A stretch of 64,000 nucleotides of DNA. Source: Schmidtea polychroa (taxonomy: Eukaryota). A program made the translations under genes and the position numbers. Position 1 is the stretch's first letter. Each line of letters begins with the position of its first letter. The DNA lies in assembly GCA_044892525.1 (NCBI GenBank), contig CM097886.1, positions 183,198,312-183,262,311 of the forward strand, written 5' to 3'. The notes below the pieces were generated by a model. It saw only the letters and a list, made by a program, of their open reading frames with translations. It was not told the origin of the DNA and did not search any database. Positions 34,525-64,000 of the stretch are shown piece after piece.

Positions 34525-34730
34525 NNNNNNNNNNNNNNNNNNNNNNNNNNNNNNNNNNNNNNNNNNNNNNNNNNNNNNNNNNNNNNNNNNNNNNNNNNNN
34601 NNNNNNNNNNNNNNNNNNNNNNNNNNNNNNNNNNNNNNNNNNNNNNNNNNNNNNNNNNNNNNNNNNNNNNNNNNNNNNNNNNNNNNNNNNNNNNNNNNNN
34701 NNNNNNNNNNNNNNNNNNNNNNNNNNNNNN
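34525..34730. other. Run of 206 N
   Basis: Directly visible; same flanks as 1104-1317. Confidence 1.

Positions 34731-36100: not shown

Positions 36101-36165
<65 letters not shown>
36101..36165. repeat. (ATT)n microsatellite, about 21 units
   Basis: Directly visible. Confidence 0.98.
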
Positions 36166-36166
<1 letters not shown>

Positions 36167-41072: not shown

Positions 41073-41460
41073 AATAAATCAGGAATGTGCAAAGGTGGAT
41101 TTGCCGGAGGTGATGCTTCATGAGCTGTGGTGCTCTCAATTGCTGGGCGCATTCTAGACATGGAGGTTTGACAGATTATTTGATGGCAATACGAACAGGA
41201 CGATATTACAGGTTTATAACCACAGCGCAAAGGAGAATTTGTTCGAGATATTAAAGAACAAATGTGTTTCATTGCTCTTGTTGTTGAGCAAGCAATGCAG
41301 GCTGCTGCTTTATCATCGCTTCCTGATGAGTTATGAACTACCAGATGATCAATTTATAACCATTGGAAATGAAATATTGAGATGTCCAGAAGCTTTGTTA
41401 CATCCATCGTTCTTGTGAATGGATATTGTTGGTATTCAGGAGGCAACTTATGACAGCATT
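41073..41460 (+). pseudogene. Actin pseudogene fragment, copy 2
   Basis: Same sequence at offset 33387. Confidence 0.92.
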
Positions 41461-41516
41461 ACATTTTCTGCAGGACTAAAAAGATATGATTTGATCCTTC
41501 CGTAATGCTTCTAGAT

Positions 41517-43916: not shown

Positions 43917-44168
43917 TTCTAGATGTTCCCGTGGCATTGTAACCAATGACCAAATAATAACCAAATCAAACATTTCATTTGGCACTCAAAATAATTATTT
44001 CACAGAAATTATTTCTATTTTCTTTAACAAATTAATTAAAAGTTTTAGTTTGATAAAGTTTCACATCAATACAAGTATTAATATCGAAATAATAAAAGCA
44101 GATCGATTGCATATTAATTTAAATTAAATCAATTAATTAATTAATCAATTAACTAATAAATAATTTAC

Positions 44169-44939
44169 CATTTTCATTTCCGGAATATCGATTAATATTC
44201 TGTAAATAATAGAAATATAAAATTCAAATCAAATAAATTGTGACATTTCCTCACCTCAACAGATCTCACAACATCGGCACCCCGGTTCACCAGTTGAGCA
44301 CAAACATTTACCATCCCTCGAATAACTGCACAGTGTAGGCCAGTCAACCCCATCTATATCTCACATAATTATTCAATCAATAAACAACAAATCTCACAAA
44401 TCCAGCATGATCAATATCAATTGATCGATCTATCAAATATTCACAATTGTCCTCCAATCCACTCGCAATCGCCTCATGCAATGGAGTTTGTGAATACTAA
44501 ATAATGCCAATATATCAATATCAATATTGAATACTCTATTGAATTACTTTGTTTTGTGTATTGGTATCGATCTCAAATTGCTGCAATACATTGATGCATT
44601 TCCTATGATGCAGCGAATGGGCCAAGGCCAATGCAGTCCCCATTGTCTACAAATATATTGATTTGATCATTTCAATAAACACATACTTCATTATTTGCAT
44701 TGATATCTACAATGTCCTGATTATCTAGTATAAATTTGGTCATATCGGCATCATTATCAGATATTGCTGTGTGTAATATGGTGAAATTGACCTTGATAAT
44801 AAATAAAATTAATTATTGATTTTGCATTATTCTGATGCACCTTTTGTCGTGATTCCATCAGAATCATTCGTTCTTGTATTTCTTCTTGTATTTCCACGAA
44901 TCCTTTTTCCTTTGCTTTGTCAATGGCCTTGATCCATAA
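44169..44939 (-). CDS. Ankyrin-repeat exon cluster (middle), copy 2
   Basis: Same exons at offset 33387. Confidence 0.85.
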
Positions 44940-45820
44940 CTGAATGATGAAATCAATGCTGATTTAATCAATTTCATCTCAAATTAGTTAATAATAATAA
45001 TAATAATAATAACAATAATAACAAAAAACAGGTAAATGATAAGGTAAGCATTTGCTGCAAAATCTTTATTAAGTGAGAAAATTATTTATATAAAATAATT
45101 CAATTCGATCTTTCATAATTTTGCTTCAATGTTGAAATGCTTGCATGATTTCCTTTTAAAATTCATTTCTGATTTTTATTTGTTCAAAAATTGATTAATT
45201 AAAATTACTGAAATGTAAAGCATAAAATATTTACGTGTTGACATATTTGAAAATATGTCCTACCAGTCAACTCAGGAAATGATTCACTATAAATAGCGCT
45301 TAAAAGATTTCAAATATCTCAACTGGTTCTACTGTAACTGATGTAAGCGCTTAGGAACACTAATCCCCTAGCCATGGGATATATTAGTCGCTATCATATT
45401 ATTAATATATTATTATCATATCAGACTATTATCATATTATTAATTTTGATCCCAGAAATTATTTGTCGGAAACATTTTTAAAAACCTGTTTGTATGTATC
45501 CAATAGTAACAAATTATTACTATTATTATTATAAGAACTTATTTTAAAAATTTTACCACAGATTTCCATTGACATTATATTTATTTAAAAGCTTGACTAT
45601 GAATCAGTAAATATATCGATATAATTGATATGCACGAATTTTCGACACCGCCTTTTTCAATTGAATTATTATTATTAATATGATTTGACATAATGAAATA
45701 ACAAAATTCATAAATGTATTTTATCACAATTTTTAATTATTTAAACAAATTTAATATTTTGGTAAATGGTTTTGTGTGATTAATGCTTTTCTAATCACAA
45801 CAATTCACTCCTCCTAATTT

Positions 45821-46716
45821 GATTGCTCTGCTGGCTATAGACGATCAACTGATAAATTCTCTAATACATAGCTTGAAATATTTTGGCTGCTTTTCTAATA
45901 GACGAAACGGACCATTATATGGAGCTTCTAATGATTTCCGTACATCTTTTCTCATGTACACGAATTCACAATCCTTAATATATTTATTGATCGTCATACA
46001 ATCTTGCAATGGTCTTTCGATTATTCTGAAGCTCTCAATAATTTCTTTAAATTGATATGGAGAAGCTTCTATTTATGAATTAAAAATAATTCCTGGTACA
46101 GCAAGATCACATTCAAATACTTTTTGTGTCGGAGAATAACCTGCTGAATCCCGACTGTTCCTTATCGTTAACAGTACCTGAGGTAAAACGTCAAATTTTT
46201 AATTTAATTTTATTCATTTTATTAATTTATTATTAATTTTATCCATTGAAGCCATTTCTTGAGATTTTAGTGTCTGATGGAATTCTGCAACTTTACAATT
46301 GGCTTGGGAATGATAAGCGCATGTTTGATTTGTATTTATTTCAAGAAAGTTGAACATATACTGGAATAAAGAGTTTGTAAATTGATCTGTTACAATTTCA
46401 GATGGGATTCCATATCGGGAAATCCCCACTTCAATTAGTGATTTTGCCACAGTTTCTGAATCTATATATTAAATGGCCAATACCTCAGGGTAATATGTTT
46501 AACTATCGATCATTGTTAGTAGATAGGACTTCTCGTTATTTGCTAGGAAGATTTGCAATTCTGCTTTGATATGACGATATACTTTTGATTTTAAGCAGGA
46601 ATCGCGTTGCTGACACAACATCTGGACATCCTTTGTCATCTTGTGTCATGTATATGAACTCAACATCAATATCTTGGCCATTCGTATTTCTGGATGAGCG
46701 ACATATTTGGGTATAT
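45821..46716 (-). mobile_element. Gypsy integrase remnant, copy 2
   Basis: Same sequence at offset 33386. Confidence 0.85.
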
Positions 46717-46719
46717 AGA

Positions 46720-47321
46720 CAGTACTGTGCGAATTAGTGTGAATATGAAATAATTTACATGTTTTATCATCTAGTTATACGACCATGTCAAAATTAGCTC
46801 CAGTTTAGTTTTACTGTTCTTATATTTGTTGTGTAATAACGTATTGGAGTTTACAGACGTGTTGTTATAGATAATTTAGTAAATACTATTGTGCTTCCTT
46901 TAGTTTTTTACTAAGACTATCCAAACTATTCTAATCTTTGTTTCTTTCTTATTTTAAAAGATGAATGTTTCTCCCAAGAAGAGCACAAAAATTGTTACCT
47001 TAAGTGAACACATCAATGTATCAAAGAGATATTGCCAAAGAGTGTGGTGCGAGTTTAGGAGCTGTAATCAACATTTTAAAACAAAAGAAGGAATTTGAGA
47101 CGGTTTAGGCGAATAGAAAAGGAAAATGTGGAAGGAAGAGGAAGACAATAATAGATGAATTTATAATAGGAGTAAGTAAATTGAATTCTAGAGAAAATAA
47201 CCAGCAACTTCAGAAAGGCTTAGCACATGGTGGAGTTATTATTCCCGATTCCACAGCTTGACAATGGCTTATCAAAGTTAGAACAAGTCTAATAGACCTC
47301 AAAAAAAAAACAATTATTGAG
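46720..47321 (+). mobile_element. Tc1 fragment, copy 2
   Basis: Same sequence at offset 33386. Confidence 0.75.
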
Positions 47322-47385
47322 CTTTGTTTAAAAAAGTGACAACGAAAACTTTACGACAGCTCATATCAATAGAATCATTAAACGC

Positions 47386-47841
47386 GATAAGGACGATGTT
47401 TTGATCTGGTTATTGTATAAAGGTACCGGATCCCTTGTGTCGGTTGAAGGCATGATAAAGGCGCTTTGTTTAATTTGTAGAAATATCGTAGCTGTTTTTA
47501 AAGATTATAATTTAAAACGGCATTATTTTCAAAAATATGTTTCCACGTATGATGATTACGACGGAATGTATCGTAAAGATAAAGTAGCTGGACTTAAGGA
47601 AAATCTGTTTTCTCAACAAACATTTTTCAAGAGAATTGTCACTCAAAATTATTCTGTCGTAAAAGTCAGTTATGTGGTAACAAATATAATTGCAAAGAAG
47701 TCGAAACCCTTCACAGATCGCAAATTTATTAAGTAATGTTTGGAAAGTCTAGCTGACATTATTTGTCCAGATAAAAAATCAGACATATCAAAAATCAGTT
47801 TATCGCAACTAACTATAGGAGGACGAATTAAAGATATTCAG
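47386..47841 (+). mobile_element. hAT N-terminal fragment, copy 2
   Basis: Same sequence at offset 33386. Confidence 0.85.
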
Positions 47842-47856
47842 GACACCTTTGTCCAT

Positions 47857-50229
47857 TGTGAGGCGTTTTGTAATTTGTATTTAAATAATGGTATGATGTT
47901 GTGCTTGTTTGATTGTATGCTGAAATCCTTACTTATACATTAATTATTATTTTTTAGAAACTCCTCAAACAAATTAACGTTATAATTTGTTTTAATAATA
48001 TTTGTGTTTTTATAATAAACGTGTTTTAGTTATGGATTCTATTAATACCCGTAGCTCTGTGGCTAATATGGCGACGACGATTGCAAATTTTATCAAGCCA
48101 CAAGAAACATATGACATGAATTCAGACGTGGAAGATTTTATCTTAGAAACGGAACGATTCTTCGAGATGACAAATATTGTCGATGAATACAGAAGCAAAT
48201 TCGTCAAAGCTTTTCTATCAATCAATTCAACGAAGAAATATGAGTTGACTAATGAAACTCTGCATTATACAGAAAGATTAAGAAACGCTTTTGCTAAGAA
48301 CAGAAGTCTTATCGATGATCTCAACGAAGCGCTAAATTATCGTCAAGGAAATGAGGCTGCCGAAGAATTCTGCTCAAAAATTGAGAAACTTCCAAAAAAT
48401 ATTTTGAAGCATAAACTTGATGAAGAAGAACTAAAGAAATTTTTGCTATTCAATTCGCTTGAAGATAAAGAAGTTAAAAAAGATCTCAAAATGCAAGATT
48501 TAAAATCATTTGATGAAATGAAAGAAAGATTAAAGAGACACGACCAAGTTTCAAAAGAAATTAATGTATTTCATGCTGATGTAGCTTCAATGAATAAAAC
48601 ACAACGCTATGCTGATGCTGTTAAGAAGAGCTTACCAAGATATAGTTATGATAACAGATCAATTCGAGAACGAGAAGCTAATCCCAGATTCAAAGATGAA
48701 TATAAAAGAGAACCTCAACATAATCCAAGATTCAAAGGCGATCTTACCAGAGAACATCGATATGCTATTTCAAATGAATGAAAACCTATGAATAGAAGTA
48801 AGCCTTATAATACCAGGGAATTTCATTCGCGAGATCATGTCCAAACAAATCAAATTTTGCGATGTTGGGCGTGCCACGAAGAAGGTCATAGAAGATCTGA
48901 ATGCCCCAATATTCAATGTGCCCATTGTAAAAGATCTGGACATTTCAAACATCAGTGCCATGAGTTATTTCCAGGCAGACGTCGAAAATTCCATAAATCA
49001 GTGGCTGCATTCGGTGACGAGGATTCAGAGGCTGATTTTGAGTACCCAAATGGGAATGCTCCACCACACGAGGAGGTGATCGGAGCAATAAATTAAAGGT
49101 AATTAATGATATGAGTAAGGGTTGTATGATTTTGAATGATTGTGATAGGTTGAATGATTGTGATAGTTTGAATGATAACTGTTGTGATGGTGTTTTTGAT
49201 TATAGAAATTATATTAATATATACATTAATAAATTTTGTATGGATGAAGTTTTCAAAGACCCACCCCTAACTTCTAATGAACTAAATGTTCTTAATCGTG
49301 ATAAACGGAATGATATAATAGTATACGATAAAATGCAGGGAAGGCCCAGTGTTACCGTAATGATTAATAATGTAAAATTAGTATGCCTATTAGATACTGG
49401 AGCTAAAATAAGTGTGATTGATTATAATATTTTTAAAATACTTGGAAATTTGAATATGACTACAAGTAATCTGAAATTAAGATGTGCGAATTATAGCCCG
49501 ATTGAAATTTGCGGTAAAACTTTATTAAATGTAAAAGTTGATAAAATTTCTGATATTAAAAAAGTAGAATTCGTTGTAGCCAAAGATATAAACCCAAAGT
49601 TGATAGGAGGTATAGATTTTCTCGAAAGATTTGGAATGCAATTGCAAATAGAAAACCGTACAGACGAAATAAATACAATTATGGAAAATTCATTTAATAA
49701 CCACATAAGTGAAGATAAGATTATAAATAATTTAATTTCCACGTTTGACGGTATTTTTATGAAACATAAATGGGATGTTGGAAAAACCGAACTATTAAAG
49801 CATGAAATACTTACTAAAGGTTATAATAAACCCAAGACGACAACCTATACATTTAATAGAAAAAATTGAAGAAAATATTCAAGAAATGTTGAAATATGGC
49901 ATTATATATGAATGTACATCTCCTTGGAATTCTCCATTAGTATGTGTTAAAAAGAAAAACAGTAGTGATATAAGAATATGCTTGGACTACCGTGCTTTAA
50001 ATAATATAACCGAAAGACCTATTTTTCCCATTCCAAATACTGATGAATTATTAGATATTCTTGACGGAGCAAAGTTTTTCTCGACAATTGATTTAGGCAA
50101 TGCTTATAATCAAGAAGAACTCGATGATGCATCAAAATTGAAAACAGCATTTCCGACAAAAAGCAAGCAATATTACTTTAACAGAATGCCATTTGGAATA
50201 GCAGCCGCACCAGCAACATTTCAAAGACT
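47857..50229 (+). mobile_element. Gypsy LTR/PBS/gag-pro-RT, copy 2
   Basis: Same sequence at offset 33386. Confidence 0.92.
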
Positions 50230-51655
50230 TCTCGTTTCCGCCAATGGAACATTAGTAAAAAGACTACACACATCAAACGAAACCATCATTTCATCATCAG
50301 AACTTTTCTTCAGTGCAGCAATGAATGAAGCAAATTCAAAGCTATCCTTACATTCGAACTCAGACGCCATTAAAGGTTTTAATAACCCATCCAAAAATTT
50401 GGCAATTTTATATTGAGCGGTTCCTACCATCGATAACACTGGTCTCATAGACATACCTGCTTTATGTACTTTTGGAAGACCATAAAACTGGTTTATATAC
50501 AACGCCTGATAGTTTTTGTGAGTTTAAATATAAAAGGAATATGGTGAGAGGATTAGTGTTTCGTGCTTGGTCACTATCCTCCACGTTTGCTAATTCAGTA
50601 AAAAGTATTGATGTATTAGTTGAGTTGTTACTTAAAAATGGCTACTCTAAATCTTCTCTTGAGAAGATGACAAAAGTGACCGTGGATAAGTTAATGTTTA
50701 AATCTGATAACGTTGGTATGTGTACGTCTGAATCTGAGGTACCTATTGATCCTGAGGAAAGAACTATGTTAAATTCGGAAAGTGACAAGAATCGATCCAA
50801 TCGCATGGAGCAGAAATATGTGTTAGTATTGCCTTATTCGGAGGGTTTCAGAGAATTTAAACATAAAATTCTCAAATATGTAGACAAGGATCAATTCAGG
50901 ATTGTTTCCACTTCTTGCAAAGTTAGCAGTATGTTTACTAGTAAATGTCCAACGCCAATTGGTTTGTGTTCTGAGCTTGTGTATCAATTTTCATGTAATG
51001 GGTGTAATGCCATATACATTGGAGAGACTGCCCGTCATCTCTGCACCCGAGTTCTTGAACACTGTCGACCATAAGGATTGACTAATATTAGTAATCATGT
51101 TAGGAAATGTGTCAGTAAAAAATAGGTATCTCTGATTTTAAAATTATTTCAAAAGGTTTAAGTAATTATTGGGAACGAGTAACTTGTGAGTCATTGTTGA
51201 TTAGATATTTAAATCCAAAAATAAATGATCAAGTTGCCCGTTCCACGGAGAATTTGAATGTGTTTAAGTAATTGAAGGATGAAGGTTGGGAGTCGTGTTT
51301 GTGGTATAATTATGTTTGTGTTTTGTAAACTATGTAATTTTTTTTAAATTTGTTAACTTTATGTTGAATGTTAAATGTTATTAAATTAAAATTTAATTTT
51401 AAAATAATATGTATGTGGGGCTATGTAAAATATGGTTTGGTTTTTTAAAATATTGTTTTTGAAATATTTTTTTTAAAATTTTTGATACAGTTTGGAGATG
51501 ATTATTATTAGTTAATTTGTTTAGATATTGCATATTTTATGTCTTATTATTGATTATCCAGATTGCGGCCTGACGAAGATTGTTGTACAATTGAAATATA
51601 TCGCGTTTATGTTGAATTTATTGAGTTGGCATTTCTGTATTATTAAATCATTGCC
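50230..51655 (+). mobile_element. Penelope-like element, copy 2 (extra 1-nt deletion in the GIY-YIG tail)
   Basis: Same sequence; the poly-A at ~51116-51122 is one base shorter, which removes the 64-aa tail ORF. Confidence 0.9.
51566..51605 (+). ncRNA. Candidate hammerhead ribozyme, copy 2
   Basis: Identical motif. Confidence 0.5.
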
Positions 51656-51858
51656 ACGTTTTTTTGATTATTAATAATAATAATAATATTAATTATTATT
51701 ATTATAACAATCACTAAATGATGGCATCGATTTAAATATAAATAAAACGACAATCCAATATTAATAACTTTTTTTTAAAATTAAGAAATAATGAAATAAC
51801 AAGTGATTATAAAGTAAAATTATTTATTGGTATATTTTGGATAGAAAAATAGAAATCG

Positions 51859-52259
51859 TTAATGAATTGCATAATTATATCTTTCTTGAATGTTGCTTTT
51901 TAAATTGCGTCTTTCAGAAGCTAGAGATATTCGTTTGAATGAGAATGCAAATGCCTTTATTGCTCTATTGATGCTAAATGTGCTAATGTTCATTGGAATT
52001 ATTTCATAAACTTGCGTTCGAATTGACTCTGATGTTATTGAAACATCCTCAAGAAAAAACCTCACGCAAATTCTTTTTCAGGCGTTAACAGTTTTCCTTC
52101 GTGGCTTTTCGTTGATTTAATCCTTCCACCTTTTTGTATACACGGAAAACACTCGCAACTGTTTGGTAATTTATATTTAATTAGTTTGAAATTTCTTTTA
52201 TGCTTTAGCTGGGATATATTTATCGTAAACAAATAGCTCATCGAATCTGACAGCTTCAT
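51859..52259 (-). mobile_element. IS630/Tc1 fragment, copy 2
   Basis: Same sequence at offset 33388. Confidence 0.6.
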
Positions 52260-52469
52260 ACTTACAGAGATTTACATTCACCCTTAATATTTTGATTTTG
52301 ACATCATTATTGAAAAAAGAGAAATAATAATAATAATAATAATTTTAAATCAATAAATAATAATAAATTAATAAAATAACTTGTCAATATATTATATAAT
52401 TCAAATAAATCAATAATTATTCCATTTCCACAAAGTTTATGAAATATTTCAACATAAAATCGATCGCCT

Positions 52470-55400
52470 TCACTCAAATGCGAAATTTAAAAAATTTAAC
52501 AAATCGATCTGACGCTTCATAAAATATTTATTTAAAATTCATAAATAAACCAATCAAATATTTTCTCACCGATTTGTCGTAAACCGTTTTCTTCATGATC
52601 GATTCGACAAACAGATGATGGCCTTGATTGACAGCCAATTCCAGAAACGACAGCTCGCCCTAATCAATATCAATACAAATCCAAATAATTATTTGACCTT
52701 ACGATTCTGCGCTGCCCATTGATAGTGTGAGCAGAATTGAATCTCTTGAACCCGCTCATGTGCCCGTGAGTGATGCAGCGATAAAGGACGCACTGAAATT
52801 ATTTATTTATTGATTTATTCAAATAATCAGCTCACTTCTTTCATTAAATTTGCATTTTTGTCCATTTGTGCTGTCAATAATTCCATTGCATTATTGATTT
52901 CCTATTGATGAGAATATTAATTATATCAATCAATAAATCAATCAAACTTTATCATCAATTGGTTTGTCAAGGATTAATTTAATAATCTTATCAGCATTGG
53001 ACTCGATTGCTCCCTCCAGCACAGCCAATCCAGTCTAAATATCAATTATTAACCAATCAGAATATCACAAATTTACATAAATATTCTGCATTATGAAATC
53101 AGAAGATTTGAGCAAATCACCAAATGCGATTGCATCATCCCGTTCAATGGCAGGAAATAACTGAAATATTTATTCAAATTGATTCATAATGAAATAATTC
53201 ACACTTTCGCCGCATGAGTCAATAATTCCACGCAATCAGCACGATTATATTGCTTTGCATAATCCAGCGGACTCTTTCCATCCTAAATAAATAATCCAAT
53301 CAAAATATCCGAATCAGCGAATCATTTAAACATCCCCATTCACAAACAGATCATTAAAGCACTGTGGCAATAAATGGTACTAAAACCGACACTGCAAAAC
53401 CGCGTGCAAAGTGTAAATACCCGTGAGATATCATGCTAAAGAAATAGTTGAGAAATGGCAAATCTGATCCGAATTACTAGCCAATGGAATTGCCGATTTG
53501 CATTTATTAATGAATTCTGTCAGTGGAGATCTCCAAATAAATGAAGTCGACATTTCAATATTGCTTCATTCATTTCAGACATTTACTGCATAAAATCCTC
53601 CAGTGCAAGGAATAAATTGCCAGAAAAGCTGCTAGAAAAGCTTTTCATTCATTTTGAGGCGTAGCAGAAAATATTTCAAATAGCAAAAATTATTTCTGTT
53701 GAGAAGTGAAAAAGTGAATTAAAAATAAAATCGATAGCAAGGAAATAGCCAATTAAAATGCTGAATTTAATGTGAGAAGTAGAGAAATGCAAATTTACAG
53801 GAAATATTTTACATACCAAAACGTAAACAATATTTGTGATGAACATCTGGCCTGCACAATCAATATTCAGTGGCCATTGTTCTGCTTGCATTGCAATTAT
53901 TGGCCTGATCTGTTTCACGGTAATTTTGATACAAATGCTATGTAAATATATAATTATTATTTTTAGCTTTGTTTTTATCATTATCATTAAATTATTTGTG
54001 AAATGTCCGAAATATTGGCAAATACAAATGAGAAACCCGATGAGTATTCTGGCAATGAAAGCGATGAACATTATGACAGTGAATATATCATACAATAGTG
54101 ACAGCGACACTCCTGACAATGAAGGAGCTTCTTCGTCCTCAGAAAGCGAGAGTGAATATGAGAAATTTACAAAATAAAGGTGCGAATGTTACAGTTGATG
54201 AGCAACTATTTCCAACCAAGCTCGATGCTTTATAAATCATGACTTTGTTCTCACAATTTAGAAAGGTAAACCGAACTAAAGTTATTTTTAAACATAAATT
54301 CTCTTTCATTTTATAATAATATATCTGACCGAATGGCAAGGAAATGTAGCGTCAAATCTGGGCCTAGAATATGGCCGCTTCAAGTACCTTTCAATATGCT
54401 AGGCTTAGCTGCAATGAATGCCTCGATACCATATAAGAGAACCGCAGCAGATAACATATCAATATGCTAGGCATAGCTGCAATGAATGCCTTGATACCAT
54501 ATAAGGGAACTGCAGCAGATAACATATCAATATGCTAGGCCTAGCTGCAATGAATGCCTCGATACCATATAAGGGAACAGCAGCAGATAACATATAAATA
54601 TGCTAGGCCTAGCTGCAATGAATGCCTCGATACCATACAAGGGAACTGCAGCAGATAACATATCAATATGCTAGGCCTAGCTGCAATGAATGCCTCGATA
54701 CCATACAAGGGAACTGCAGCAGATAACATATCAATATGCTAGGCATAGCTGCAATGAATGCCTCGATACCATATAAGGGAACAGCAGCAGATAACATATC
54801 AATATGCTAGGCCTAGCTGCAATGAATGCCTCGATACCATACAAGGGAACTGCAGCAGATAACATATCAATATGCTAGGCCTAGCTGCAATGAATGCCTC
54901 GATACCATATAAGGGAACTGCAGCAGATAACATATCAATATGCTAGGCCTAGCTGCAATGAATGCCTCGATACCATATAAGGGAACCGCAGCAGATAACA
55001 TATCAATATGCTAGGCCTAGCTGCAATGAATGCCTCGATACCATATAAGGGAACTGCAGCAGATAACATATCAATATGCTAGGCCTAGCTGCAATGAATG
55101 CCTCGATACCATATAAGGGAACTGCAGCAGATAACATATCAATATGCTAGGCATAGCTGCAATGAATGCCTCGATACCATATAAGGGAACTGCAGCAGAT
55201 AACATATCAATATGCTAGGCCTAGCTGCAATGAATGCCTCGATACCATATAAGGGAACCGCAGCAGATAACATATCAATATGCTAGGCCTAGCTGCAATG
55301 AATGCCTCGATACCATATAAGGGAACTGCAGCAGATAACATATCAATATGCTAGGCCTAGCTGCAATGAATGCCTCGATACCATATAAGGGAACCGCAGC

Positions 55401-58400
55401 AGATAACATATCAATATGCTAGGCCTAGCTGCAATGAATGCATCGATACCATATAAGGGAGCTGCAGCAGATAACATATCAATATGCTAGGCCTAGCTGC
55501 AATGAATGCCTCGATACCATACAAGGGAACTGCAGCAGATAACATATCAATATGCTAGGCCTAGCTGCAATGAATGCCTCGATACCATATAAGGGAACTG
55601 CAGCAGATAACATATCAATATGCTAGGCCTAGCTGCAATGAATGCCTCGATACCATATAAGGGAACCGCAGCAGATAACATATCAATATGCTAGGCCTAG
55701 CTGCAATGAATGCATCGATACCATATAAGGGAGCTGCAGCAGATAACATATCAATATGCTAGGCCTAGCTGCAATGAATGCCTCGATACCATACAAGGGA
55801 ACTGCAGCAGATAACATATCAATATGCTAGGCATAGCTGCAATGAATGCCTCGATACCATATAAGGGAATAGCAGCAGATAACATATCAATATGCTAGGC
55901 CTAGCTGCAATGAATGCCTCGATACCATATAAGGGAATAGCAGCAGATAACATATCAATATGCTAGGCATAGCTGCAATGAATGCCTCGATACCATATAA
56001 GGGAATAGCAGCAGATAACATATCAATATGCTAGGCCTAGCTGCAATGAATGCCTCGATACCATACAAGGGAACTGCAGCAGATAACATATCAATATGCT
56101 AGGCCTAGCTGCAATGAATGCCTCGATACCATACAAGGGAACTGCAGCAGATAACATATCAATATGCTAGGCATAGCTGCAATGAATGCCTCGATACCAT
56201 ACAAGGGAACTGCAGCAGATAACATATCAATATGCTAGGCATAGCTGCAATGAATGCCTCGATACCATATAAGGGAATAGCAGCAGATAACATATCAATA
56301 TGCTAGGCCTAGCTGCAATGAATGCCTCGATACCATATAAGGGAACTGCAGCAGATAACATATCAATATGCTAGGCTTAGCTGCAATGAATGCCTCGATA
56401 CCATATAAGGGAACAGCAGCAGATAACATATCAATATGCTAGGCATAGCAGCAATGAATGCCTCGATACCATATAAGGGAACTGCAGCAGATAACATATC
56501 AATATGCTAGGCCTAGCTGCAATGAATGCCTCGATACCATATAAGGGAACTGCAGCAGATAACATATCAATATGCTAGGCCTAGCTGCAATGAATGCCTC
56601 GATACCATACAAGGGAACCGCAGCAGATAACATATCAATATGCTAGGCCTAGCAGCAATGAATGCCTCGATACCATATAAGGGAACTGCAGCAGATAACA
56701 TATCAATATGCTAGGCCTAGCTGCAATGAATGCCTCGATACCATATAAGGGAACTGCAGCAGATAACATATCAATATGCTAGGCCTAGCTGCAATGAATG
56801 CCTCGATACCATATAAGGGAACTGCAGCAGATAACATATCAATATGCTAGGCCTAGCTGCAATGAATGCCTCGATACCATATAAGGGAACAGCAGCAGAT
56901 AACATATCAATATGCTAGGCATAGCTGCAATGAATGCCTCGATACCATATAAGGGAACTGCAGCAGATAACATATCAATATGCTAGGCCTAGCTGCAATG
57001 AATGCCTCGATACCATATAAGGGAACTGCAGCAGATAACATATGCTGCTCAATACAAAATCAGAAAGCGTGTTACCAGTAAATATATCGACACCTTCAAA
57101 TAGCCTCCATCTCACGCGTAAATGGCGCATGATTGGATATTGCAATAATAATAACATCACAAATAATTATTTTCATTGCTTTTAATGAATTATTTCCAGT
57201 TTAATAATGAATATTATATTATAATTATATTTATTTATTATTTGATAATATGGCAGCGCATGTAAGGCTACTTTATAAAGGTTATTTGCTAATCAATCGC
57301 TTCTGCTTGGGGAGCAAGATATTATATTTGATGGCCCATTGAAGCCATTATGACTGTTGCTGGTAGCAATTGCTATGATTGTTATTGGCCGTTCTAGTGT
57401 TAGTTATCTAAATTGATAAATTATTGGCTGTTGGCAATGCAATTTGCTGCGGCGGCTGGTAAAGGGCAAGATCATATGATAATGCTGTCACATCGATATT
57501 GGCCATATCGGGCCTGCAGGGAGCTATTGCATTCTCACCCCGCTAACGGTTCCATTGACACCTCATTCTGTGCTCTCTTGCCTCTCACTAGAGCTCTCTG
57601 AGGCAGTTCTCAATGGCATTTCATTCATTGCTCCTTATGCAATCCATTTCACATATTCAATTAACCAGATCGCAACTCACCAGATTTAATTGATATTTCA
57701 TTATATAAAATGTTAATGTTTACTTTTGTTCGGCAATCGATTCGGCATTTCCGCTGCAGCAATAATTTCAATATTTCTGAATGCCCATAGCAGCTAGCAT
57801 GATGAATCGCTCTCCATCCCTGCAATTTATCAATTAATTATTTATTTGCAATGATTATTTACCGCTTTGTCCTCAGATTCCACATCGCAGTTGCTGTCAA
57901 GCAATAATTTCAATATTTCTGAATGCCCATAGCAGCTAGCATGATGAATCGCTCTGAATCCCTGCAATTTATCAATTAATTATTTATTTGCAATGATTAT
58001 TTACCCATTTGTCCTCAGATTCCACATCGCAGTTGCTGTCAAGCAATAATTTCAATATTTCTGAATGCCCATTGCAGCTAGCATGATGAATCGCTCTCCA
58101 TCCCTGCAATTTATCAATTAATTATTTATTTGCAATGATTATTTACCGCTTTGTCCTCAGATTCCACATCGCAGTTGCTGTCAAGCAATAATTTCAATAT
58201 TTCTGAATGCCCATAGCAGCTAGCATAATGAATCGCTCTGAATCCCTGCAATTTATCAATTAATTATTTATTTGCAATGATTATTTACCAATTTGGTCTC
58301 AGATTCCACATCGCAGTTGCTGTCAAGCAATAATTTCAATATTTCTGAATGCCCATGGCAGCTAGCATGATGAATCGCTCTGAATCCCTGCAATTTATCA

Positions 58401-58728
58401 ATTAATTATTTATTTGCAATGATTATTTACCGCTTTGTCCTCAGATTCCACATCGCAGTTGCGGTCAAGCAATAACCTGGCAATATCAACAAATCCATAA
58501 CGGCAAGCAATGTGAATGGGCAACCAGCCCTGAAATCAGAAACATTAACCCAATAATTCACATTGCCAATCAATCTCACATCATCATCAACAATCCTATG
58601 CATAAATTCTCCCCTCAAATTATCCCTGACGCCCTCCACATTTCCCCTCATCAAGTGCTCCTTGAAACATTGAAAATCCCTGCAATGCAAATTATCCAAT
58701 GCAAATCATAATCAATATTTCACCCCAT
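52470..58728 (-). CDS. Ankyrin-repeat 5' exon cluster, copy 2, with three extra 99-nt ankyrin exons
   Basis: Repeat exons at 58529-58431, 58387-58289, 58245-58147, 58103-58005, 57961-57863 and 57819-57724; downstream exons 53282-52470. Confidence 0.8.
54003..57179 (+). mobile_element. piggyBac remnant, copy 2
   Basis: Same flanks with a longer internal array. Confidence 0.85.
54392..57043 (+). repeat. 68-bp tandem array, 39 units
   Basis: 2652 bp = 39 x 68; the 1156-bp difference equals the offset change 33359 to 34515. Confidence 0.98.
57759..58468 (-). repeat. 142-bp tandem module (99-nt ankyrin exon + 43-nt intron), 5 units
   Basis: Periodic GCAATAA at 57759, 57901, 58043, 58185, 58327 and 58469; the 426-bp gain equals the offset change 34515 to 34941. 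Confidence 0.97.
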
Positions 58729-59940
58729 CTTGATATTTACTTTCTGTTTTATCTATCAATTAATTGCAAAATCAATAAATTTAATTATAATTTAATTAAC
58801 AAGTTCAAAATCAAAAAATCTTACTTCCTAAAATCCAAATGAAATCAATTAAATAGCAGCCAATCAATTCTCAAGGCTAAATAATAAATTTGAAGCGATA
58901 AAACAAATCAATTGCAATCAATAATAAATGTAATATATATAATGGAATTGTCAGGCTGATAAAATTGATATTCAATATTCAATGCGACAACCGAACGATC
59001 TGACGGATTCCCCCGATGCGGCAATTATTATCAATGATTACAACATTCCATGAAGCTGCAAATATTATTATTGTTCTTTGGTAACTTTCAAATAATTTGC
59101 AAGCATTACACAAATGCCTAAATATTATTTTAAATGCTCAATTATATCCACTCAAATCCTCATGCTAATAAATAACAATATTAATAACAATTTTATACAA
59201 ATCATTTAATTGCTTTATAATTGCCATTATTTCATAACATCACATATAATTGTTACATAAAATGAATAAATTTATTAATTAAATAATAAATCAAATAGAA
59301 ATTATATTAATAAATACAAAGATGAAAAACATAAAAAATTAAACATTTGAATAATTATAAAAGCCAACATAATTATATAAACAAATATACAAAAATATTA
59401 TAATGGTAATATAATTGAAAGCACATTAACGCAAAACAAATATATTTCACTAAAACTGGAAATAATAATGCTTAAATTAAATCAGCAAATGTTTAACAAA
59501 AAATATCATAATATTCTAAAAATTTAAATATTTTAATTTCAAATATATAATGCATTAGTAAGATGGGAAACTACTTACAAAATTATTAAAAGTTTGTTTA
59601 AAATTAATGGTTTTTTGAATTTGACTTTGGAATTTGATTTACTGTTCACCTCTTAAGTGGTAATTGATAACATTTTTGTGAACATAATTTTTCAAAGTTT
59701 CTCTATGTCTCAATTCGAATTTGGAATTTTCAGTTTTCATCATTATTTACAATCGTCTTTCTTCCAAAAGTGTATTGTTGGTTTCTGAACTATGCCGAAA
59801 TTCCGAGCATTTTGAAAGCTACAGAATATTATTATTTTTACTTCATGATTCATTAGTCGAGAACACTTCAGATCTATTTCAGGACGAGGAGATTTTAATC
59901 GGTTTTTCCTTATTAGTTTCATTCATTAAATTGCTTCAAG

Positions 59941-62900
59941 TTACGATCAAGGACATTTTGGATTGGTACTTATTCTGAGGATCCATAAAAACTCGAGGTT
60001 TCGAGCTTATATGATATCACTGGAGTAATTACAAGATATAATTCTGCGTTCAATAAGGCTCATTTATAATTATTCATCTGACAATTCCACTCATATTTCA
60101 TTAATGATTTTGCCAATCATGACAGAAAATAGCTATTTTAGCTCCTCGGTTTATAAAAAATTGATCAAAGATTGAACCGTAACTAATAAAGCAATTGTTG
60201 GGTCGCTTAGGGGTGTGTCATTTTATTGCTAAAATGTTTTAGGGGTATTATATGTAAGGAATTGACTCCTTTCTAAACGCCTTAATGACTATTGTACTTT
60301 AGACCATCTGTGTACCCATGTCAGAGGTGTACGCAATGATTGAAAATCAATGACCAGGTGAGCTCTATTGCTAAAATTACTCCTTATTGCATTTTCTTTT
60401 CAGATTCTGGAATCCGATAAAAAGTCTTACGTCATTATTCAGTATCTGTTCTATCGCTAGATCATTGTCATGTTTTCATTTAACTGTGGTCTTCATTGCC
60501 CATTTCAATAATCTATTTTATGTATCCTTATGATTCTATAGCCCTTCAAATGTTTTATGGTCTGTTCTAATAACTACCTCTGTTCTATATATATGGCCTA
60601 AATTATTTCTATTGTTGAATATCTTAATTGGGCACCTTTTAACGTTTTACTTGCATTAGCTATTACATAAACTTTACATTTTTCTTCTTCTTGTATTAAG
60701 ACTGCCCCTACGGCTTTACCGCTGGCGTCAGTCATAACTATAAATTGTTTTTTAAAGTCTGGGTATCTTAATATTGGTGCAGTTACTAATTTTTCGTTTA
60801 TTGATCAATGTTTTTGATGTTTTGCTGTCCATTTCTTTTGTGGTTTATTGATTTTATCGTTTATACTTTGTACTATGAACACATTTTTACTTTCTCCCTT
60901 GGTTTTTATTCCTTTAGTTAATTCTATCATCGGTGCTTCTATTTTTGCATACTCTTGTATAAATTTACGATAATACCTTGTTAAACCTAAAAATCCTTGC
61001 ACTTGTAATGTTTTTGGGACTGGAAACTTTTTTACAGCTTCAATTTTATCTGGGTTTAGTGTTATGCCCTCCACACTAACAATATGTTCCAAATATAACG
61101 CTGAGGGCTCCGCCCATTTACATTTAGTTGATTTAATCTTTATCTTTGTCTTTCTTAATCGCTGTAATACGTTTGTAATGTCTTTTAAATGTTCCTCAAA
61201 TGTTTTTGATGATATTAGTATGTCGTCCATGTAAACTGCGCAATGATGTACACCTACTAATATTGTATTCATTAAACGCTGGAAGGTTGATGGTGCATTG
61301 GTTAACCCAAAAGGTAATCTTTATTTGCATAAATGGCTGAAAAATATTTAGAGTCTCTTAATTTATCAAATTGTTCTTGTGCTTTTGGAAATGGGTATGA
61401 GTCTTTTACTGTTACGTCATTTAGTTTATGATAGTCAATGCACATTCTTATTTCTCCATCTTTTTTTCTAACTGGTACTATTGGTAGTGCCCATTGTGAA
61501 AAACTTTGTTTAATTACACCTGCCTGTTTTAATTCTTTAATTTTTCGTTTTATTTCCTCCTTCAATTTATAAGGTACTCATTAGGGTCTTTGTTTTATGG
61601 GTCTATCATTATCTGTATCTATCACATGTCTAATGATGTCTGTATCTCCTAAATTAAATTCATGTTTAGCAAAAACATCGTTACATTCATCAATTAAGGT
61701 TTCTAATTGTGATTGTTGATTTTCATTTAAATATTTATTATCAATTTTTACTTTATCGTAGAATTTTATGTTATTTGGTTTAACCAGTTCGACAACGTTT
61801 TCACTCGTATTCTCCGTTATTCACATCTCACTTATTTCAATAATTTGTTCTGCTTTTCCTTTAAATAGCTTTCATAGTTTTGTATCTTTATGTATTTTTA
61901 TATTATTATTTTCATAATTTGCAAATCGTATCAGGATTATTCCGTTTTTTGGAGTTACACACTCGTCTATCAGCATACATTGTGATTTTTTGTGATTGCC
62001 GTAACAAGCTCAAAAATAAAAGTGTCCTCACTTTTGATATTAACTTTTACAGGAACTATATGACTACATTTGTATTCTAGCTCTAAACCTTCTAAAACGA
62101 TTACCTCTGAAAATTTTGCGTTACGGTGGTTTGCTTTCCTTTTAACTGTACTATTTGTTAAATCTATCACACAATTTTCTAGTTTATTAAGTATGTCCAT
62201 TCCAAGAACACATATGCTTTTGCACTCCTCAGCGACTTTAATATATATGATTTATTGTTTGACTTGCCAAATGGGCAGTTAGCTCAATGTTTTCTTTTAA
62301 TGGAATATCGTGTGCTGACAATGATACCACTCTTTCTCTTGTCGTTACAATATTTTTCTTTTGATTCTCTGTTAATTAACCCTCTCTTATCAATGATGCT
62401 GCTGCTCCTGTATCAACTTGAGCATATATGCTTATAATATCTATTGTTATTTGAAGTAGTGGTCTTGCTTCATTTGCCGATCCCCATAGGTCATTTATGC
62501 AAAGTTCCAAACTATAGCACCCGTATATATTTTCTGGGTATACCATGACAACCTTTGCTTAGTTTTGGCATCTTAATTTCAATATTATTTTCCATTTCTT
62601 TTAATAAATCTCTTTGATTATCGTATAGGCCTTTGCTTGGCTGTTGTTCTGATTCTTCCGGGTTTCTTCATCTTTTTCTATGATCATTATTTGCTGCTAG
62701 TCTTTTCTTTGTCTTTTTATTAATCGGATCTATTTGTCATGTTTTGCTGTTATTAAATATTTCGCTATGAATGGACAAAAACATGCTATTAGCTTGTACG
62801 AATTTCCAAACACTTGTCTGAGCTACTTTAATGACACTAATGATGGGCAAATCATTTTCAATAGAGTCACTGTATAGTATATTCATAATATTGCTGAGAA

Positions 62901-63541
62901 CATGTTTCCGAGGATTGCGAAATATCCCAATATAATATATAATATTTGGTATAATACTCAGTATACCACCTTTTTTTAAATGTTCCTCTACCTGAATAGT
63001 TTCCATATATACTTCATAATCATTGTAATTGCTCCGTTTATGACCTAATTGGTTTTGACTTCCTTAGTTATCGTTCTTAATTAGTTATTTCTGTTGACCA
63101 TTTTAGTAATTCCCCTTCTTCTGTTTACTCTCGTTTATCCTACTGTTTAGATAATTGCTCTCTAAATTCTCAAATTGTTTATTTCCCCAAATTGCCGCGC
63201 TCAGGTTTTCTTCATCGCTCGGGTTCTCCATTGGCTCGGACTTCCCATTAGCTCCGGTTATCCATTAGTCAATTAATTAATAGTTTGTGTTTTTCCATAT
63301 TTGGCTGTTTTTCGACCTTTCTAAACATTTTCTAACAATTTATTGCTCACTGTTCTTCATTATTCCCAAATCTACAGCTGTCCCGTTTTTCAGCTTCAAT
63401 TTCGATAACATTTCACTTTATCCCACTTCCTCAGATTTGCAAATGTTTTTATTTCGTGTCTGATTGTACTATTTTATAGTTCTGTTTTTGTCATATCTTT
63501 CTTTGCCATTAATTCTCCGCTTGATCACCATTCTCTTTCGT
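59941..63541 (-). mobile_element. Second gypsy element, copy 2
   Basis: Same sequence at offset 34941. Confidence 0.9.
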
Positions 63542-64000
63542 TCAATTTTGGTTTTCTTTTTACTCGAAATTATTTAATTTAACGTAATTTAATAATTCAC
63601 TTTTACAACCTCATCATAAATAATATTTCTAAATATTATATTAATAATTAAACATTAGGTAAAATTATAATATAATTATATAATTGAAATTAATAGAAAT
63701 ATTGTAGAATGATGTTTTCTTGCTTTATATATTGTTGGTGTAAAATAATCCTCTTGTTTTGTACTGGACAAGACCCATGCTCAAAATAATCAACGTTTTA
63801 CGGATTTCGTAATGTGACAAATTTTTTTGGGGTACTCGAACCAAAATATATAGTCAAATTATCAACAGTATCCGGAGGTTATATTTTCTGAGTTTCACAC
63901 CCAGCTTCTGAATGTTATCTCAATTGTGAAGAATGAATTGAAGGAAAAGATATAAATTAAAACATTTGCGGAATTACTTCTTACAAAATATAGCTTTTTA

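What the first reader, a model, noticed from the sequence alone, without database searches (positions are those of the whole stretch)
57724..58580. Ankyrin exon-intron cassette array with copy-number variation and DARPin-like hypervariable binding positions
Seen: each 142-bp unit is exactly one 99-nt phase-0 exon plus one 43-nt GT-AG intron. Copy 1 has 3 such exons: GRLPIHIACREG..SETKW, GWRAIHHASSNG..SESNG, GFRAIHYASSYG..CRTK. Copy 2 has 6: GWLPIHIACRYG..SEDKA, GFRAIHHASCHG..SETKL, GFRAIHYASCYG..SEDKA, GWRAIHHASCNG..SEDKW, GFRAIHHASCYG..SEDKA, GWRAIHHASCYG..CRTK. The scaffold (HSEILKLLL, DSNCDVESE) and the introns are essentially invariant; I saw one synonymous change and one intron change. 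Almost all other differences change amino acids at repeat positions 1-3, 5, 10, 13 and 14, in mosaic combinations. Even the preceding exon differs at hairpin position 3 (DDY vs DDD). Established: positions 2, 3, 5, 13, 14 and 33 are the target-contacting residues randomised in DARPin libraries. Repeat shuffling with selection on exposed residues is known for fungal NLR WD40/ANK/TPR domains and brown-algal one-repeat-per-exon LRR/TPR genes. Inference: this may be a diversifying recognition module, reshuffled by unequal crossing-over or gene conversion and possibly by in-frame exon skipping, in a candidate animal innate-immune receptor family.
Basis: partly seen in the sequence, partly recalled or inferred. 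Interest (0 to 1): 0.9.

Follow-up and report, generated by a model that had tools for sequence, protein, structure and literature searches.

The report
Hypervariable ankyrin exon cassettes, RING ligase
Two neighbouring copies of an animal ankyrin-RING ubiquitin-ligase gene carry 3 and 6 near-identical "one ankyrin repeat plus one 43-nt intron" cassettes. These differ almost only at the residues ankyrin repeats use to grip targets, which suggests a fast-evolving target-recognition module.

Summary
On the minus strand there are six (57724-58529) and three (23209-23588) tandem 142-bp units. Each is a 99-nt phase-0 ankyrin exon plus a 43-nt GT-AG intron.

RNA contigs from two studies carry the exon-exon joints; two DNA-like runs do not. 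The cassettes form the N-terminus of an intact 25-exon, 1024-aa gene (58728 to 36865) made of ankyrin repeats plus a C-terminal IAP/MIB-type RING. TE-filled introns separate the exons. The gene is repeated in a ~33.4-kb tandem duplication.

The array's flanks differ by about 0.12% between the two copies. Despite this, the first cassette plus the preceding exon differ at 8 nucleotides in 5 codons. All 8 are non-synonymous and all lie on the predicted binding face.

Among the internal units, 7 of 12 variable nucleotides fall in the 18 nt of the a-priori DARPin positions (Fisher p = 9e-5). Introns and scaffold are nearly invariant. One scaffold change has replaced all units in another strain, which indicates concerted evolution.

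Best reading: unequal crossing-over or gene conversion, combined with diversifying selection, acting on the substrate-binding face of an E3 ligase. An immune role and exon skipping are unproven.

First-stage notes record further copies of this gene 44-107 kb upstream, with the same reading.

The parts
57724..58529 (-). Copy B cassette array: six ankyrin exons (58529-58431, 58387-58289, 58245-58147, 58103-58005, 57961-57863, 57819-57724) separated by five identical 43-nt GT-AG introns
   Evidence: sequence and translation; Pfam Ank 26.9-32.6 bits against cut-off 21.1; exon/intron depth contrast and exon-exon joints in RNA runs only
23209..23588 (-). Copy A cassette array: three ankyrin exons (23588-23490, 23446-23348, 23304-23209) and two 43-nt introns, one carrying an A>T change
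58580..58679 (-). Exon 2 (100 nt): N-terminal capping repeat ...DFQCFKEHLMRGNVEGVRDNL...IVDDD. It is followed by the 50-nt intron 58530-58579. Its last codon is D in B and Y in A.
   Evidence: joints 58530->58580 and paralogue variants; homologues P0153 and P0039 begin the same way
58724..58752 (-). Exon 1 with the start codon (ATG 58728-58726, coding ATGGG). It is followed by the 44-nt intron 58680-58723 and preceded by a 72-nt 5'UTR intron (58753-58824) and a 5'UTR exon reaching at least 59000.
   Evidence: sequence; joints 58678->58723 and 58752->58825 with CT..AC ends in RNA runs only, plus X10 record 14; P0153 starts MMGDFQCF
53283..57723 (-). 4.4-kb intron after the last cassette exon. 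It holds the 68-bp satellite (54391-57043, 39 copies).
   Evidence: loose ends at 57723/57724 in RNA contigs continue into an xGxSPLDxAK exon
36865..53282 (-). Remaining 17 coding exons of copy B: 53282-53205, 53160-53077, 53034-52948, 52901-52836, 52792-52703, 52659-52570, 44939-44841, 44791-44687, 44646-44548, 44496-44398, 44353-44255, 44199-44169, 38396-38101, 38059-37941, 37886-37292, 37249-37052, 37008-36865. They encode more ankyrin repeats. TE-filled introns lie between them.
   Evidence: tblastn of homologue P0003; splice-site curation; joined CDS of 3075 nt with a single terminal stop; Pfam Ank on P0003 and on large exons
36865..37008 (-). Last exon: C-terminal RING finger (CQICSGNNVEIGFQCGHLTCNVCSMELFECPFC) and stop codon
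   Evidence: motif; PF13920 zf-C3HC4_3, 31.6 bits against cut-off 27; best solved matches are livin/BIRC7, XIAP, MIB1 RING3, cIAP
3476..23787 (-). Copy A of the same gene (22 exons, RING exon 3619-3476). The ORF is intact.
1..64000 (.). Tandem segmental duplication with a period of about 33.4 kb (1-29059 matches 33428-64000)
   Evidence: 0.19% substitutions outside the two arrays

Best explanation
**What it is.** The cassettes form the N-terminal substrate-binding part of a lineage-specific family of ankyrin-RING proteins, which are putative E3 ubiquitin ligases. The genes lie in a tandem cluster of ~33-kb units.

**How the array changes.** Each 142-bp cassette holds exactly one ankyrin repeat in a symmetric phase-0 exon plus a minimal intron. 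Unequal crossing-over or gene conversion between cassettes, and between paralogues, therefore adds, removes and recombines repeats in frame. The same process keeps scaffold and introns nearly identical (concerted evolution).

**What keeps the variation.** Amino-acid variation persists, and is reshuffled, only at the hairpin and first-helix positions that form the ankyrin binding groove. This points to diversifying selection for new or multiple target specificities. The RING would then ubiquitinate whatever the groove binds.

**Shown**
- Cassette anatomy, splicing and transcription.
- The full gene model with a RING.
- Extreme local excess of binding-face changes over flanks, introns and synonymous sites.
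- Recombination breakpoints.
- Scaffold homogenisation between strains.

**Inferred**
- Selection, as opposed to targeted mutation.
- E3 ligase activity.
- The nature of the targets: pathogen, transposon, selfish-element or allorecognition proteins.
For: **Anatomy and gene model**
- Units and translations.
- Intact 1024-aa gene with Ank repeats and a zf-C3HC4_3 RING.

**Transcription and splicing**
- RNA runs X7 and X10 show exon bins at about 1000-8000 depth against intron bins at about 9-165.
- GT-AG joints at introns 1 and 2, the cassette introns and a 5'UTR intron appear only in the RNA runs.
- Contigs continue from 57724 into the next exon.

**Local excess of differences**
- The array's flanks differ by 2 in 1681 nt between A and B.
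- Exon 2 plus cassette 1 carry 8 nt differences in 5 codons, all non-synonymous (p = 2e-10).

**Variation among internal units**
- 13 non-synonymous events against 1 synonymous and 1 intronic (p = 0.008).
- Enrichment at the a-priori DARPin positions: p = 8.7e-5 by nucleotide, 5e-4 by codon.

**New alleles in other strains and paralogues**
- They fall on the same codons (7, 10, 11, 31, 33).
- The first hairpin reads DDD-GW, DDY-GR, DAN-GQ, DAN-GW or DHLY-GW.
- The next, non-cassette repeat varies at positions 3, 5 and 10.

**Independent homologues.** P0039 and P0153 have their highest entropy at exon positions 7, 2, 11, 33 and 10, together with scaffold position 26.

**Recombination and concerted evolution**
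- The last exon's 5' third is swapped between A and B.
- All A units carry S and all B units carry C at codon 10.
- V27M is in every laid unit of X7, X10 and X5 but almost absent in X1.
- Unit number is 3, 6, 4, 5 or more across family members.
Against: - Only two complete arrays were available, so there is no codon-model test and no recombination-aware dN/dS.
- Outside the array the two copies differ by 10 non-synonymous and 3 synonymous changes (dN/dS about 0.87). This short-term comparison therefore shows no clear constraint, and one copy could be drifting.
- Many codon differences need two nucleotide changes. They are old alleles being shuffled, not new mutations, so the excess over the 0.12% flank divergence measures recombination input as much as selection.
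- Logan contigs mix paralogues and strains.
- No experiment or annotation links the family to any target, to ligase activity or to immunity.
- DARPin position 33 does not vary here, whereas positions 1 and 10 (not randomised in DARPins) do.
Confidence: 0.6

Rival explanations
1. Neutral birth-and-death with recombination. The cassettes are recent duplicates in a young, weakly constrained tandem gene family. The variable codons are surface positions free to drift in older paralogues, and gene conversion or unequal crossing-over simply imports those old differences. No diversifying selection and no special function are involved.
For: - dN/dS is about 0.87 outside the array between A and B.
- Multi-nucleotide codon differences imply old alleles rather than recent adaptive mutations.
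- A 1.6-kb patch elsewhere in the gene (B 52557-54135) is about 1.6% diverged in coding and non-coding sequence alike. This shows that ectopic conversion from other paralogues does happen.
Against: - Conversion tracts carry whole stretches. Imported neutral variation should therefore appear at synonymous, scaffold and intron sites too, yet these show 1, 0 and 1 changes against 13 at binding-face sites.
- Changes at codons 2 and 11 of cassette 1, and in exon 2, sit in cassette-1-specific context flanked by identical sequence.
- The replacements are aromatic-rich (W, F, Y, H), as is typical of binding paratopes.
- The genes are intact and expressed.
Confidence: 0.22
2. Assembly or consensus artefact. 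The 33-kb repeat, the 3-versus-6 unit counts or the variant bases arise from mis-assembly or mis-polishing of near-identical repeats or haplotypes.
For: - The two copies are 99.8% identical and adjacent.
- Short-read contigs cannot span an array.
- The best DNA holder may be the sample the assembly was made from.
Against: - Variant alleles at the same codons, and several different unit orders, appear in RNA contigs of two independent studies and in a second DNA study.
- Errors would not avoid introns, synonymous sites and scaffold, nor keep every reading frame open.
- Homologues from an older, independent annotation also differ in unit number.
- First-stage notes of this scan (unchecked here) report further copies upstream.
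Confidence: 0.05
3. Programmed or regulated diversification. Cassettes are skipped in frame during splicing, or rearranged somatically or between clonal lineages, to give many binding surfaces from one gene.
For: - All cassette exons are symmetric phase 0, so any subset stays in frame.
- RNA contigs show joints that jump one or more whole units or go back (58246->58434, 58104->58434, 57820->58293, back 236).
Against: - The decoded jump joints give unit orders present in neither A nor B (for example a unit ending DKW followed by a GFRAIHY unit). They come from runs of a strain about 2% diverged from the reference, so other paralogues or strain arrangements explain them.
- Contigs of short reads collapse repeats.
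- No DNA evidence of rearrangement could be obtained.
Confidence: 0.08

Closest known systems
Fungal NLR repeat domains with high internal conservation (ANK, TPR, WD; Dyrka et al. 2014, PMC4986451)
   Same: - Near-identical tandem repeats and repeat-number differences.
- Concerted evolution.
- Variable or positively selected sites on the inner helices and hairpin of the ankyrin concave face (one search compared).
   Different: - This is an animal-type gene (GT-AG mini-introns, metazoan-type transposons).
- Each repeat is its own exon with its own intron.
- The partner domain is a C-terminal RING, not a NACHT or NB-ARC NOD module.
DARPin combinatorial libraries (consensus repeat DxxGxTPLHLAAxxGHLEIVEVLLKzGADVNA, randomised at positions 2, 3, 5, 13, 14, 33; Binz et al. 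2003, from my own knowledge; register checked against solved DARPins)
   Same: A fixed 33-residue scaffold with variation at positions 2, 3, 5, 13 and 14. The number of internal repeats between caps varies.
   Different: - This array is natural.
- Position 33 is fixed (E), whereas positions 1 and 10 vary.
- The diversity is a handful of alleles per site, not a library.
Expanded E3-ligase substrate-receptor families under positive selection: nematode and plant F-box and MATH-BTB (Thomas 2006, as cited in PMC8120010); vertebrate TRIM5/finTRIM (from my own knowledge)
   Same: A conserved ubiquitin-ligase module is joined to a rapidly diversifying substrate-recognition module, in tandem gene clusters. 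An immune or conflict role is proposed for those families.
   Different: - The recognition module here is an ankyrin solenoid that changes by cassette number and shuffling as well as by point changes.
- The RING is C-terminal and of the IAP/MIB type.
- There is no F-box, BTB, B-box or SPRY domain.
Mind bomb (MIB1/MIB2) and IAP-type RING ligases
   Same: Ankyrin repeats followed by a C-terminal zf-C3HC4_3 RING. MIB1 ankyrin repeats and MIB1 RING3, XIAP, livin and cIAP RINGs are the best solved matches.
   Different: No MIB/HERC2, ZZ or BIR domains were found in the gene or its homologues. The sequence relationship is at domain level only.
One-repeat-per-exon repeat genes: vertebrate ankyrins with 99-bp repeat exons, and brown-algal LRR/TPR exon-shuffling genes (both from my own knowledge; not found in the paper library)
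   Same: One repeat is encoded per symmetric exon, which allows in-frame gain and loss.
   Different: Here exon and intron are duplicated together as nearly identical 142-bp units. The copies are so young that their introns are still identical.

Membership tests
Ankyrin repeat (Pfam PF00023) | 33-residue helix-turn-helix-hairpin repeat scoring above the curated cut-off | tested here: met
   Five cassette exons were scanned singly and scored 26.9-32.6 bits against a cut-off of 21.1. Model positions 2-33 match exon positions 1-32. DARPin and ankyrin chains are the top solved matches.
RING-type E3 ubiquitin ligase (zf-C3HC4_3, IAP/MIB type) | C3HC4 cross-brace zinc-ligand pattern scoring above the curated cut-off | tested here: met
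   Last exon 37008-36868 scores PF13920 31.6 bits against cut-off 27. The full Cys/His pattern is present. The nearest solved chains are livin, XIAP, MIB1 RING3 and cIAP.
RING-type E3 ubiquitin ligase | E2-dependent ubiquitin transfer activity | not testable with these tools
   This needs an in-vitro autoubiquitination assay.
High-internal-conservation recognition repeats (as in fungal NLRs) | Tandem repeats nearly identical at nucleotide level, with repeat-number differences | tested here: met
   Period 142 with 95% matches. Unit number is 3 versus 6 between paralogues and 4 or 5+ in homologues. Variation among individuals was not tested.
High-internal-conservation recognition repeats (as in fungal NLRs) | Variable or positively selected sites concentrated on the binding surface | tested here: met
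   Enrichment tests give p = 8.7e-5 and 5e-4. Non-synonymous against synonymous plus intron events are 13 to 2. Codon-model tests were not possible.
NOD-like receptor (NLR / STAND) | Central NACHT or NB-ARC NTPase domain | tested here: not met
   Pfam on homologues P0003 and P0001 and on large exons of the window gives only Ank families and RING. Precomputed Pfam for P0039 and P0153 lists Ank families, plus a RING on P0039 only.
Mind bomb (MIB) family | N-terminal MIB/HERC2 and ZZ domains before the ankyrin repeats | tested here: not met
   The N-terminus is MGDFQCF... followed directly by an ankyrin cap and cassettes. No such Pfam hits were found in the homologues.
TRIM family | N-terminal RING, B-box and coiled coil | tested here: not met
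   The RING is C-terminal, and no B-box or coiled-coil families were detected.
Cargo gene of a giant LTR retroelement (a reading found in other notes on this genome) | Gene lies between LTRs of one element; a sense-oriented cargo gene should lack introns | tested here: not met
   The gene spans 21.9 kb with 24 coding-region introns. It lies on the same strand as the adjacent decayed gypsy pol fragment. No intra-period long direct repeats were found.

The most novel reading that the evidence does not exclude
The cassette array is a natural, evolvable 'DARPin library' on an E3 ligase. Its repertoire would be enlarged within individuals or clonal lineages, either by in-frame cassette skipping during splicing or by frequent mitotic unequal exchange among the tandem gene copies. 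That would make it an animal intracellular recognition system with combinatorial diversity, aimed at viruses, retroelements or non-self.
Probability: 0.07. Interest if true: 0.95.

Novelty: new variant of a known kind. Interest (0 to 1): 0.64.

Why it matters
Concerted evolution combined with diversifying selection on repeat binding faces is documented for fungal NLRs. Positive selection on substrate receptors is documented for several E3-ligase families. To my knowledge and in the paper searches made here, an animal ankyrin-RING family with all of the following has not been described:
- whole repeat-plus-intron cassettes that are gained, lost and shuffled;
- variation confined to the positions that protein engineers randomise in DARPins.

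If the reading holds, it offers:
- a tractable case of how modular exons speed the evolution of binding specificity;
- a candidate intracellular restriction or recognition system in a transposon-laden invertebrate genome;
- naturally selected ankyrin paratopes whose targets could be found by pull-down.

Tried and rejected
- **Fetching genomic loci of homologues.** `look-up of encoding contigs` had no record for P0003 or P0039. No further paralogue DNA could be aligned, so no codon-model test was run.
- **Searching for more family members.** `search for homologous proteins` with the N-terminal array of P0039 gave one further true member (P0153). The rest were generic ankyrin proteins.
- **Identifying the organism.** A search with the hAT/Buster-like ORF showed only that such elements are widespread in animals. 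The organism was not identified. Cluster look-up gave only UniParc ids.
- **Structure prediction.** A single-sequence AlphaFold model of P0153:1-240 was poor (mean pLDDT 44.5) and was not used. The spliced window protein cannot be given by reference, so it was not folded. Mapping rests on the alignment to solved DARPins.
- **N-myristoylation.** Considered for the MG start and dropped, because D after G2 violates the PROSITE pattern (my own knowledge).
- **Giant-retroelement cargo reading.** Considered and rejected, because of the intron-rich 22-kb gene and the absence of LTR-like repeats within the period.
- **Bacterial promoter scan.** Run on the upstream region. It is irrelevant for a eukaryote.
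- **Literature.** Searches for planarian or other animal ankyrin-RING expansions, and for one-repeat-per-exon ankyrin genes, found nothing specific.
Full report
**1. The observation**

On the minus strand, 57724-58529 holds six exons: five of 99 nt and a last one of 96 nt. Five identical 43-nt introns (GTAAATAATCATTGCAAATAAATAATTAATTGATAAATTGCAG) separate them. The equivalent place one repeat period earlier, 23209-23588, holds three exons and two introns, one of which carries a single A>T. Tandem Repeats Finder reports a 142-bp period, 5.1 copies and 95% matches. Each exon scanned alone scores above the Pfam Ank cut-off (26.9-32.6 bits against 21.1). All exons are phase 0 at both ends.

**2.

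- **Tandem duplication.** The window is 1.9 periods of a ~33.4-kb tandem duplication: 1-29059 matches 33428-64000.
- **Homologue-guided model.** A HMMER search with a 220-aa exon found a small family of homologues. One of them, P0003 (774 aa), maps collinearly on both copies.
- **Gene B.** With curated GT-AG sites, copy B gives a 25-exon, 3075-nt ORF with one terminal stop, encoding 1024 aa. It runs from ATG 58728 to stop 36865. Copy A is the same gene with three fewer cassettes, running 23787-3476.
- **Protein.** It consists of MGDFQCF..., an ankyrin cap, the cassette array, many further and more diverged ankyrin repeats, and a C-terminal RING. The RING scores PF13920 31.6 bits against a cut-off of 27. 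Its nearest solved chains are livin, XIAP, MIB1 RING3 and cIAP.
- **Introns.** Three introns are large and filled with mobile-element remains:
  - 4.4 kb right after the array, holding the 68-bp satellite;
  - 7.6 kb, holding a gypsy element on the other strand;
  - 5.8 kb, holding a hAT/Buster-like ORF.
- **Absent domains.** No NACHT, TIR, death, BIR, MIB/HERC2 or membrane features were detected in the gene or its homologues.

**3. Transcription and splicing**

Contigs of two RNA-type runs from different studies (X7, X10) and two DNA-type runs (X1, X5) were laid on 57400-59000.

- **Depth.** In the RNA runs, exon bins reach about 1000-8000 while intron-dominated bins sit at about 9-165. In the DNA-type runs depth is comparatively even.
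- **Joints.** They occur only in the RNA runs:
  - intron 1 (58680-58723, ends CT..AC on the plus strand, which is GT..AG on the gene strand);
  - intron 2;
  - cassette introns (58388->58433 and 58246->58292, which decode to junctions exactly at the predicted exon ends);
  - a 72-nt 5'UTR intron (58753-58824).
- **Continuation.** Contigs ending at 57723/57724 run on into sequence encoding xGxSPLDxAK, which is the next exon (53282...).
- **Conclusion.** The cassettes are spliced exons of the ankyrin-RING mRNA.
- **Caveat.** X7, X10 and X5 come from a strain about 2% diverged from the reference in the flanking intron, and contigs mix paralogues.

**4. Is the variation pattern real and non-random?**

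*Register.* Alignment of a cassette to solved DARPins gives exon position 1 = DARPin position 4. The amino-acid-variable exon codons map as follows:

| Exon codon | DARPin position |
|---|---|
| 2 | 5 |
| 7 | 10 |
| 10 | 13 |
| 11 | 14 |
| 31 | 1 |
| 32 | 2 |
| 33 | 3 |

*Internal units.* Among A2, A3 and B2-B6 the variable nucleotides are exon positions 5, 6, 12, 19, 28, 31, 91, 92, 96, 97 and 98, plus one intron site. That makes at least 13 non-synonymous events against one synonymous and one intronic. Given 76 non-synonymous sites and 66 silent-plus-intron sites, the binomial p is 0.008.

*Test on the a-priori set.* This uses the set randomised in DARPin libraries (positions 2, 3, 5, 13, 14, 33; Binz et al. 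2003, my own knowledge).
- 7 of those 18 nt vary, against 5 of 124 elsewhere (Fisher p = 8.7e-5).
- 5 of the 7 variable codons fall in the 6 a-priori positions (p = 5e-4).

*Comparison with the flanks.* This is the strongest contrast.
- The 680 nt 3' of the array and the 1 kb 5' of the gene differ between A and B by one base each, about 0.12%.
- Exon 2 plus cassette 1 differ at 8 bases in 5 codons: D/Y, W/R, Y/E, D/T and A/W. All 8 are non-synonymous and all lie on the hairpin or at positions 5 and 14.
- The Poisson p is 2e-10.

**5. Independent support for the same sites**

- **New alleles** seen in the other runs fall on:
  - codons 7 (W, F), 10 (W), 11 (S), 31 and 33 (S, L);
  - two scaffold sites (23, 27);
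  - one synonymous and one intron site, each in minor contigs.
- **First hairpin.** Paralogue transcripts read DDD-GW, DAN-GQ, DAN-GW and DHLY-GW. Copy A's genomic sequence reads DDY-GR.
- **Next repeat.** The adjacent non-cassette repeat reads DGKSPLDYAK, GGKSPLDYAK, KGESPLDLAK or GGRSPLDFAK, so it varies at positions 3, 5 and 10.
- **Homologues.** In P0039 (4 units) and P0153 (5 units, two identical) the highest per-column entropy is at exon positions 7, 2, 11, 33 and 10, with scaffold position 26 equally high.
- **Residue types.** The variant residues are rich in W, F, Y and H, as in binding paratopes (my own knowledge).

**6. Mechanism of change**

- **Swapped exon third.** The last cassette exon of A and B differs at five of its first 31 nt. 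It differs at none of the remaining 65 nt, and at only one of the following 680 nt. Its 5' third was therefore exchanged within the invariant scaffold.
- **Within-array homogenisation.** All A units carry AGC (S) and all B units carry TGC (C) at codon 10.
- **Spread between strains.** In X7, X10 and X5 every laid unit, including cassette 1, has ATG (M) at codon 27. X1 and the assembly have GTG (V). A scaffold substitution has therefore spread through, or been purged from, the whole array between strains.
- **Old alleles.** Several variable codons differ by two nucleotides (TGG/TTC, GAG/TAT, GCG/TGG/TTG/GGG, GAC/ACC/AGC). The flanks are only 0.12% diverged, so these are pre-existing alleles reshuffled among cassettes and paralogues, not fresh mutations.
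- **Ectopic conversion elsewhere.** A separate 1.6-kb patch (B 52557-54135) is about 1.6% diverged in exons and introns alike. It shows that ectopic conversion from other paralogues occurs in this gene.

**7. What selection can and cannot be claimed**

Homogenisation acts on whole tracts. Variation that survives only at binding-face codons therefore needs either diversifying selection or a site-targeted process, and I favour selection.

The claim has limits.
- It rests on two arrays plus mixed contigs.
- Outside the array the two copies show 10 non-synonymous and 3 synonymous differences (dN/dS about 0.87). That is compatible with neutrality over this short time.
- No codon model could be run, because no further paralogue DNA could be fetched.
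- I put 0.6 on the selection-plus-concerted-evolution reading and 0.22 on neutral shuffling of old surface variation.

**8. Comparison with known systems**

- **Closest in behaviour.** The fungal NLR repeat domains with high internal conservation come closest. Their ANK, TPR and WD repeats show repeat-number polymorphism, concerted evolution and positively selected sites on the concave face (PMC4986451). The window gene fails NLR membership because it has no NOD domain.
- **Closest in logic.** It resembles E3-ligase substrate-receptor families whose recognition domains are under positive selection (F-box and MATH-BTB; PMC8120010 citing Thomas 2006) and TRIM5-like restriction factors (my own knowledge).
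- **Domain make-up.** This recalls Mind bomb, but the MIB/HERC2 and ZZ domains are absent.
- **New features:** the animal setting, the exon-plus-intron cassette as the unit of change, and the RING partner.

**9. Relation to earlier notes of this scan**

First-stage notes on the same chromosome, 44-107 kb upstream, describe the following:
- 'hidden 21-exon ankyrin-RING' genes;
- a 142-bp exon-plus-intron duplication;
- a 'hypervariable ankyrin binding surface on an E3 ligase'.

These notes prompted my search for the RING. They fit a tandem cluster of at least five or six copies. I could not read those sequences, so they are leads, not evidence.

**10. Verdict**

- **Observation:** confirmed.
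- **Interpretation:** partly supported. Cassette shuffling and binding-face hypervariability hold. An immune receptor role and exon skipping remain open.
- **Novelty:** a new variant of a known evolutionary mode.
- **Interest:** 0.64.

Noticed in passing
window 19196-20776 versus 52557-54135: This 1.6-kb patch covers exons 9-14 of the gene and their introns. It carries about 25 substitutions between the two copies (about 1.6%), whereas the rest of the 33-kb unit differs by about 0.1%. Coding and non-coding sites are equally affected. It is probably a conversion tract from a third paralogue.
   Followed up: partly
window 21032-22528 and 54391-57043: A 68-bp satellite (22 versus 39 copies, 96-97% matches) lies inside the 4.4-kb intron directly after the last cassette exon. 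Another first-stage note derives it from piggyBac coding sequence.
   Followed up: no
window 57883, 58167, 58451 (exon position 79 of cassettes): The G>A change (V27M in the scaffold) is present in all contigs laid from runs X7, X10 and X5. It is absent or minor in X1. A scaffold change has therefore been homogenised over all cassettes between strains.
   Followed up: partly
window 60500-63063 (-) and 25867-28122 (-): A decayed gypsy-type pol fragment (protease, RT with YMDD, RNase H; frameshifted, no integrase) lies 1.8 kb upstream of the gene's start, on the same strand, in both copies.
   Followed up: no
window 47999-51071 (+), 41841-43573 (-), 30713-32487 (-): Further mobile-element ORFs are present. 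A gypsy gag-PR-RT lies in the 7.6-kb intron. A GTF2IRD2-like hAT/Buster transposase lies in the 5.8-kb intron (87% identical to its best database hit). A BED-finger hAT-like ORF lies between the two gene copies.
   Followed up: partly
window 1104-1317 and 34525-34730; 2663-2793: Two N runs sit at equivalent positions of the two copies. The third N run corresponds to a (TTA)n tract in the other copy.
   Followed up: no
protein P0153, residues about 330-757: The later part of this database homologue looks like a gene model that reads through a long array of further ankyrin cassettes in shifting frames. Some family members may therefore carry many more units.
   Followed up: no
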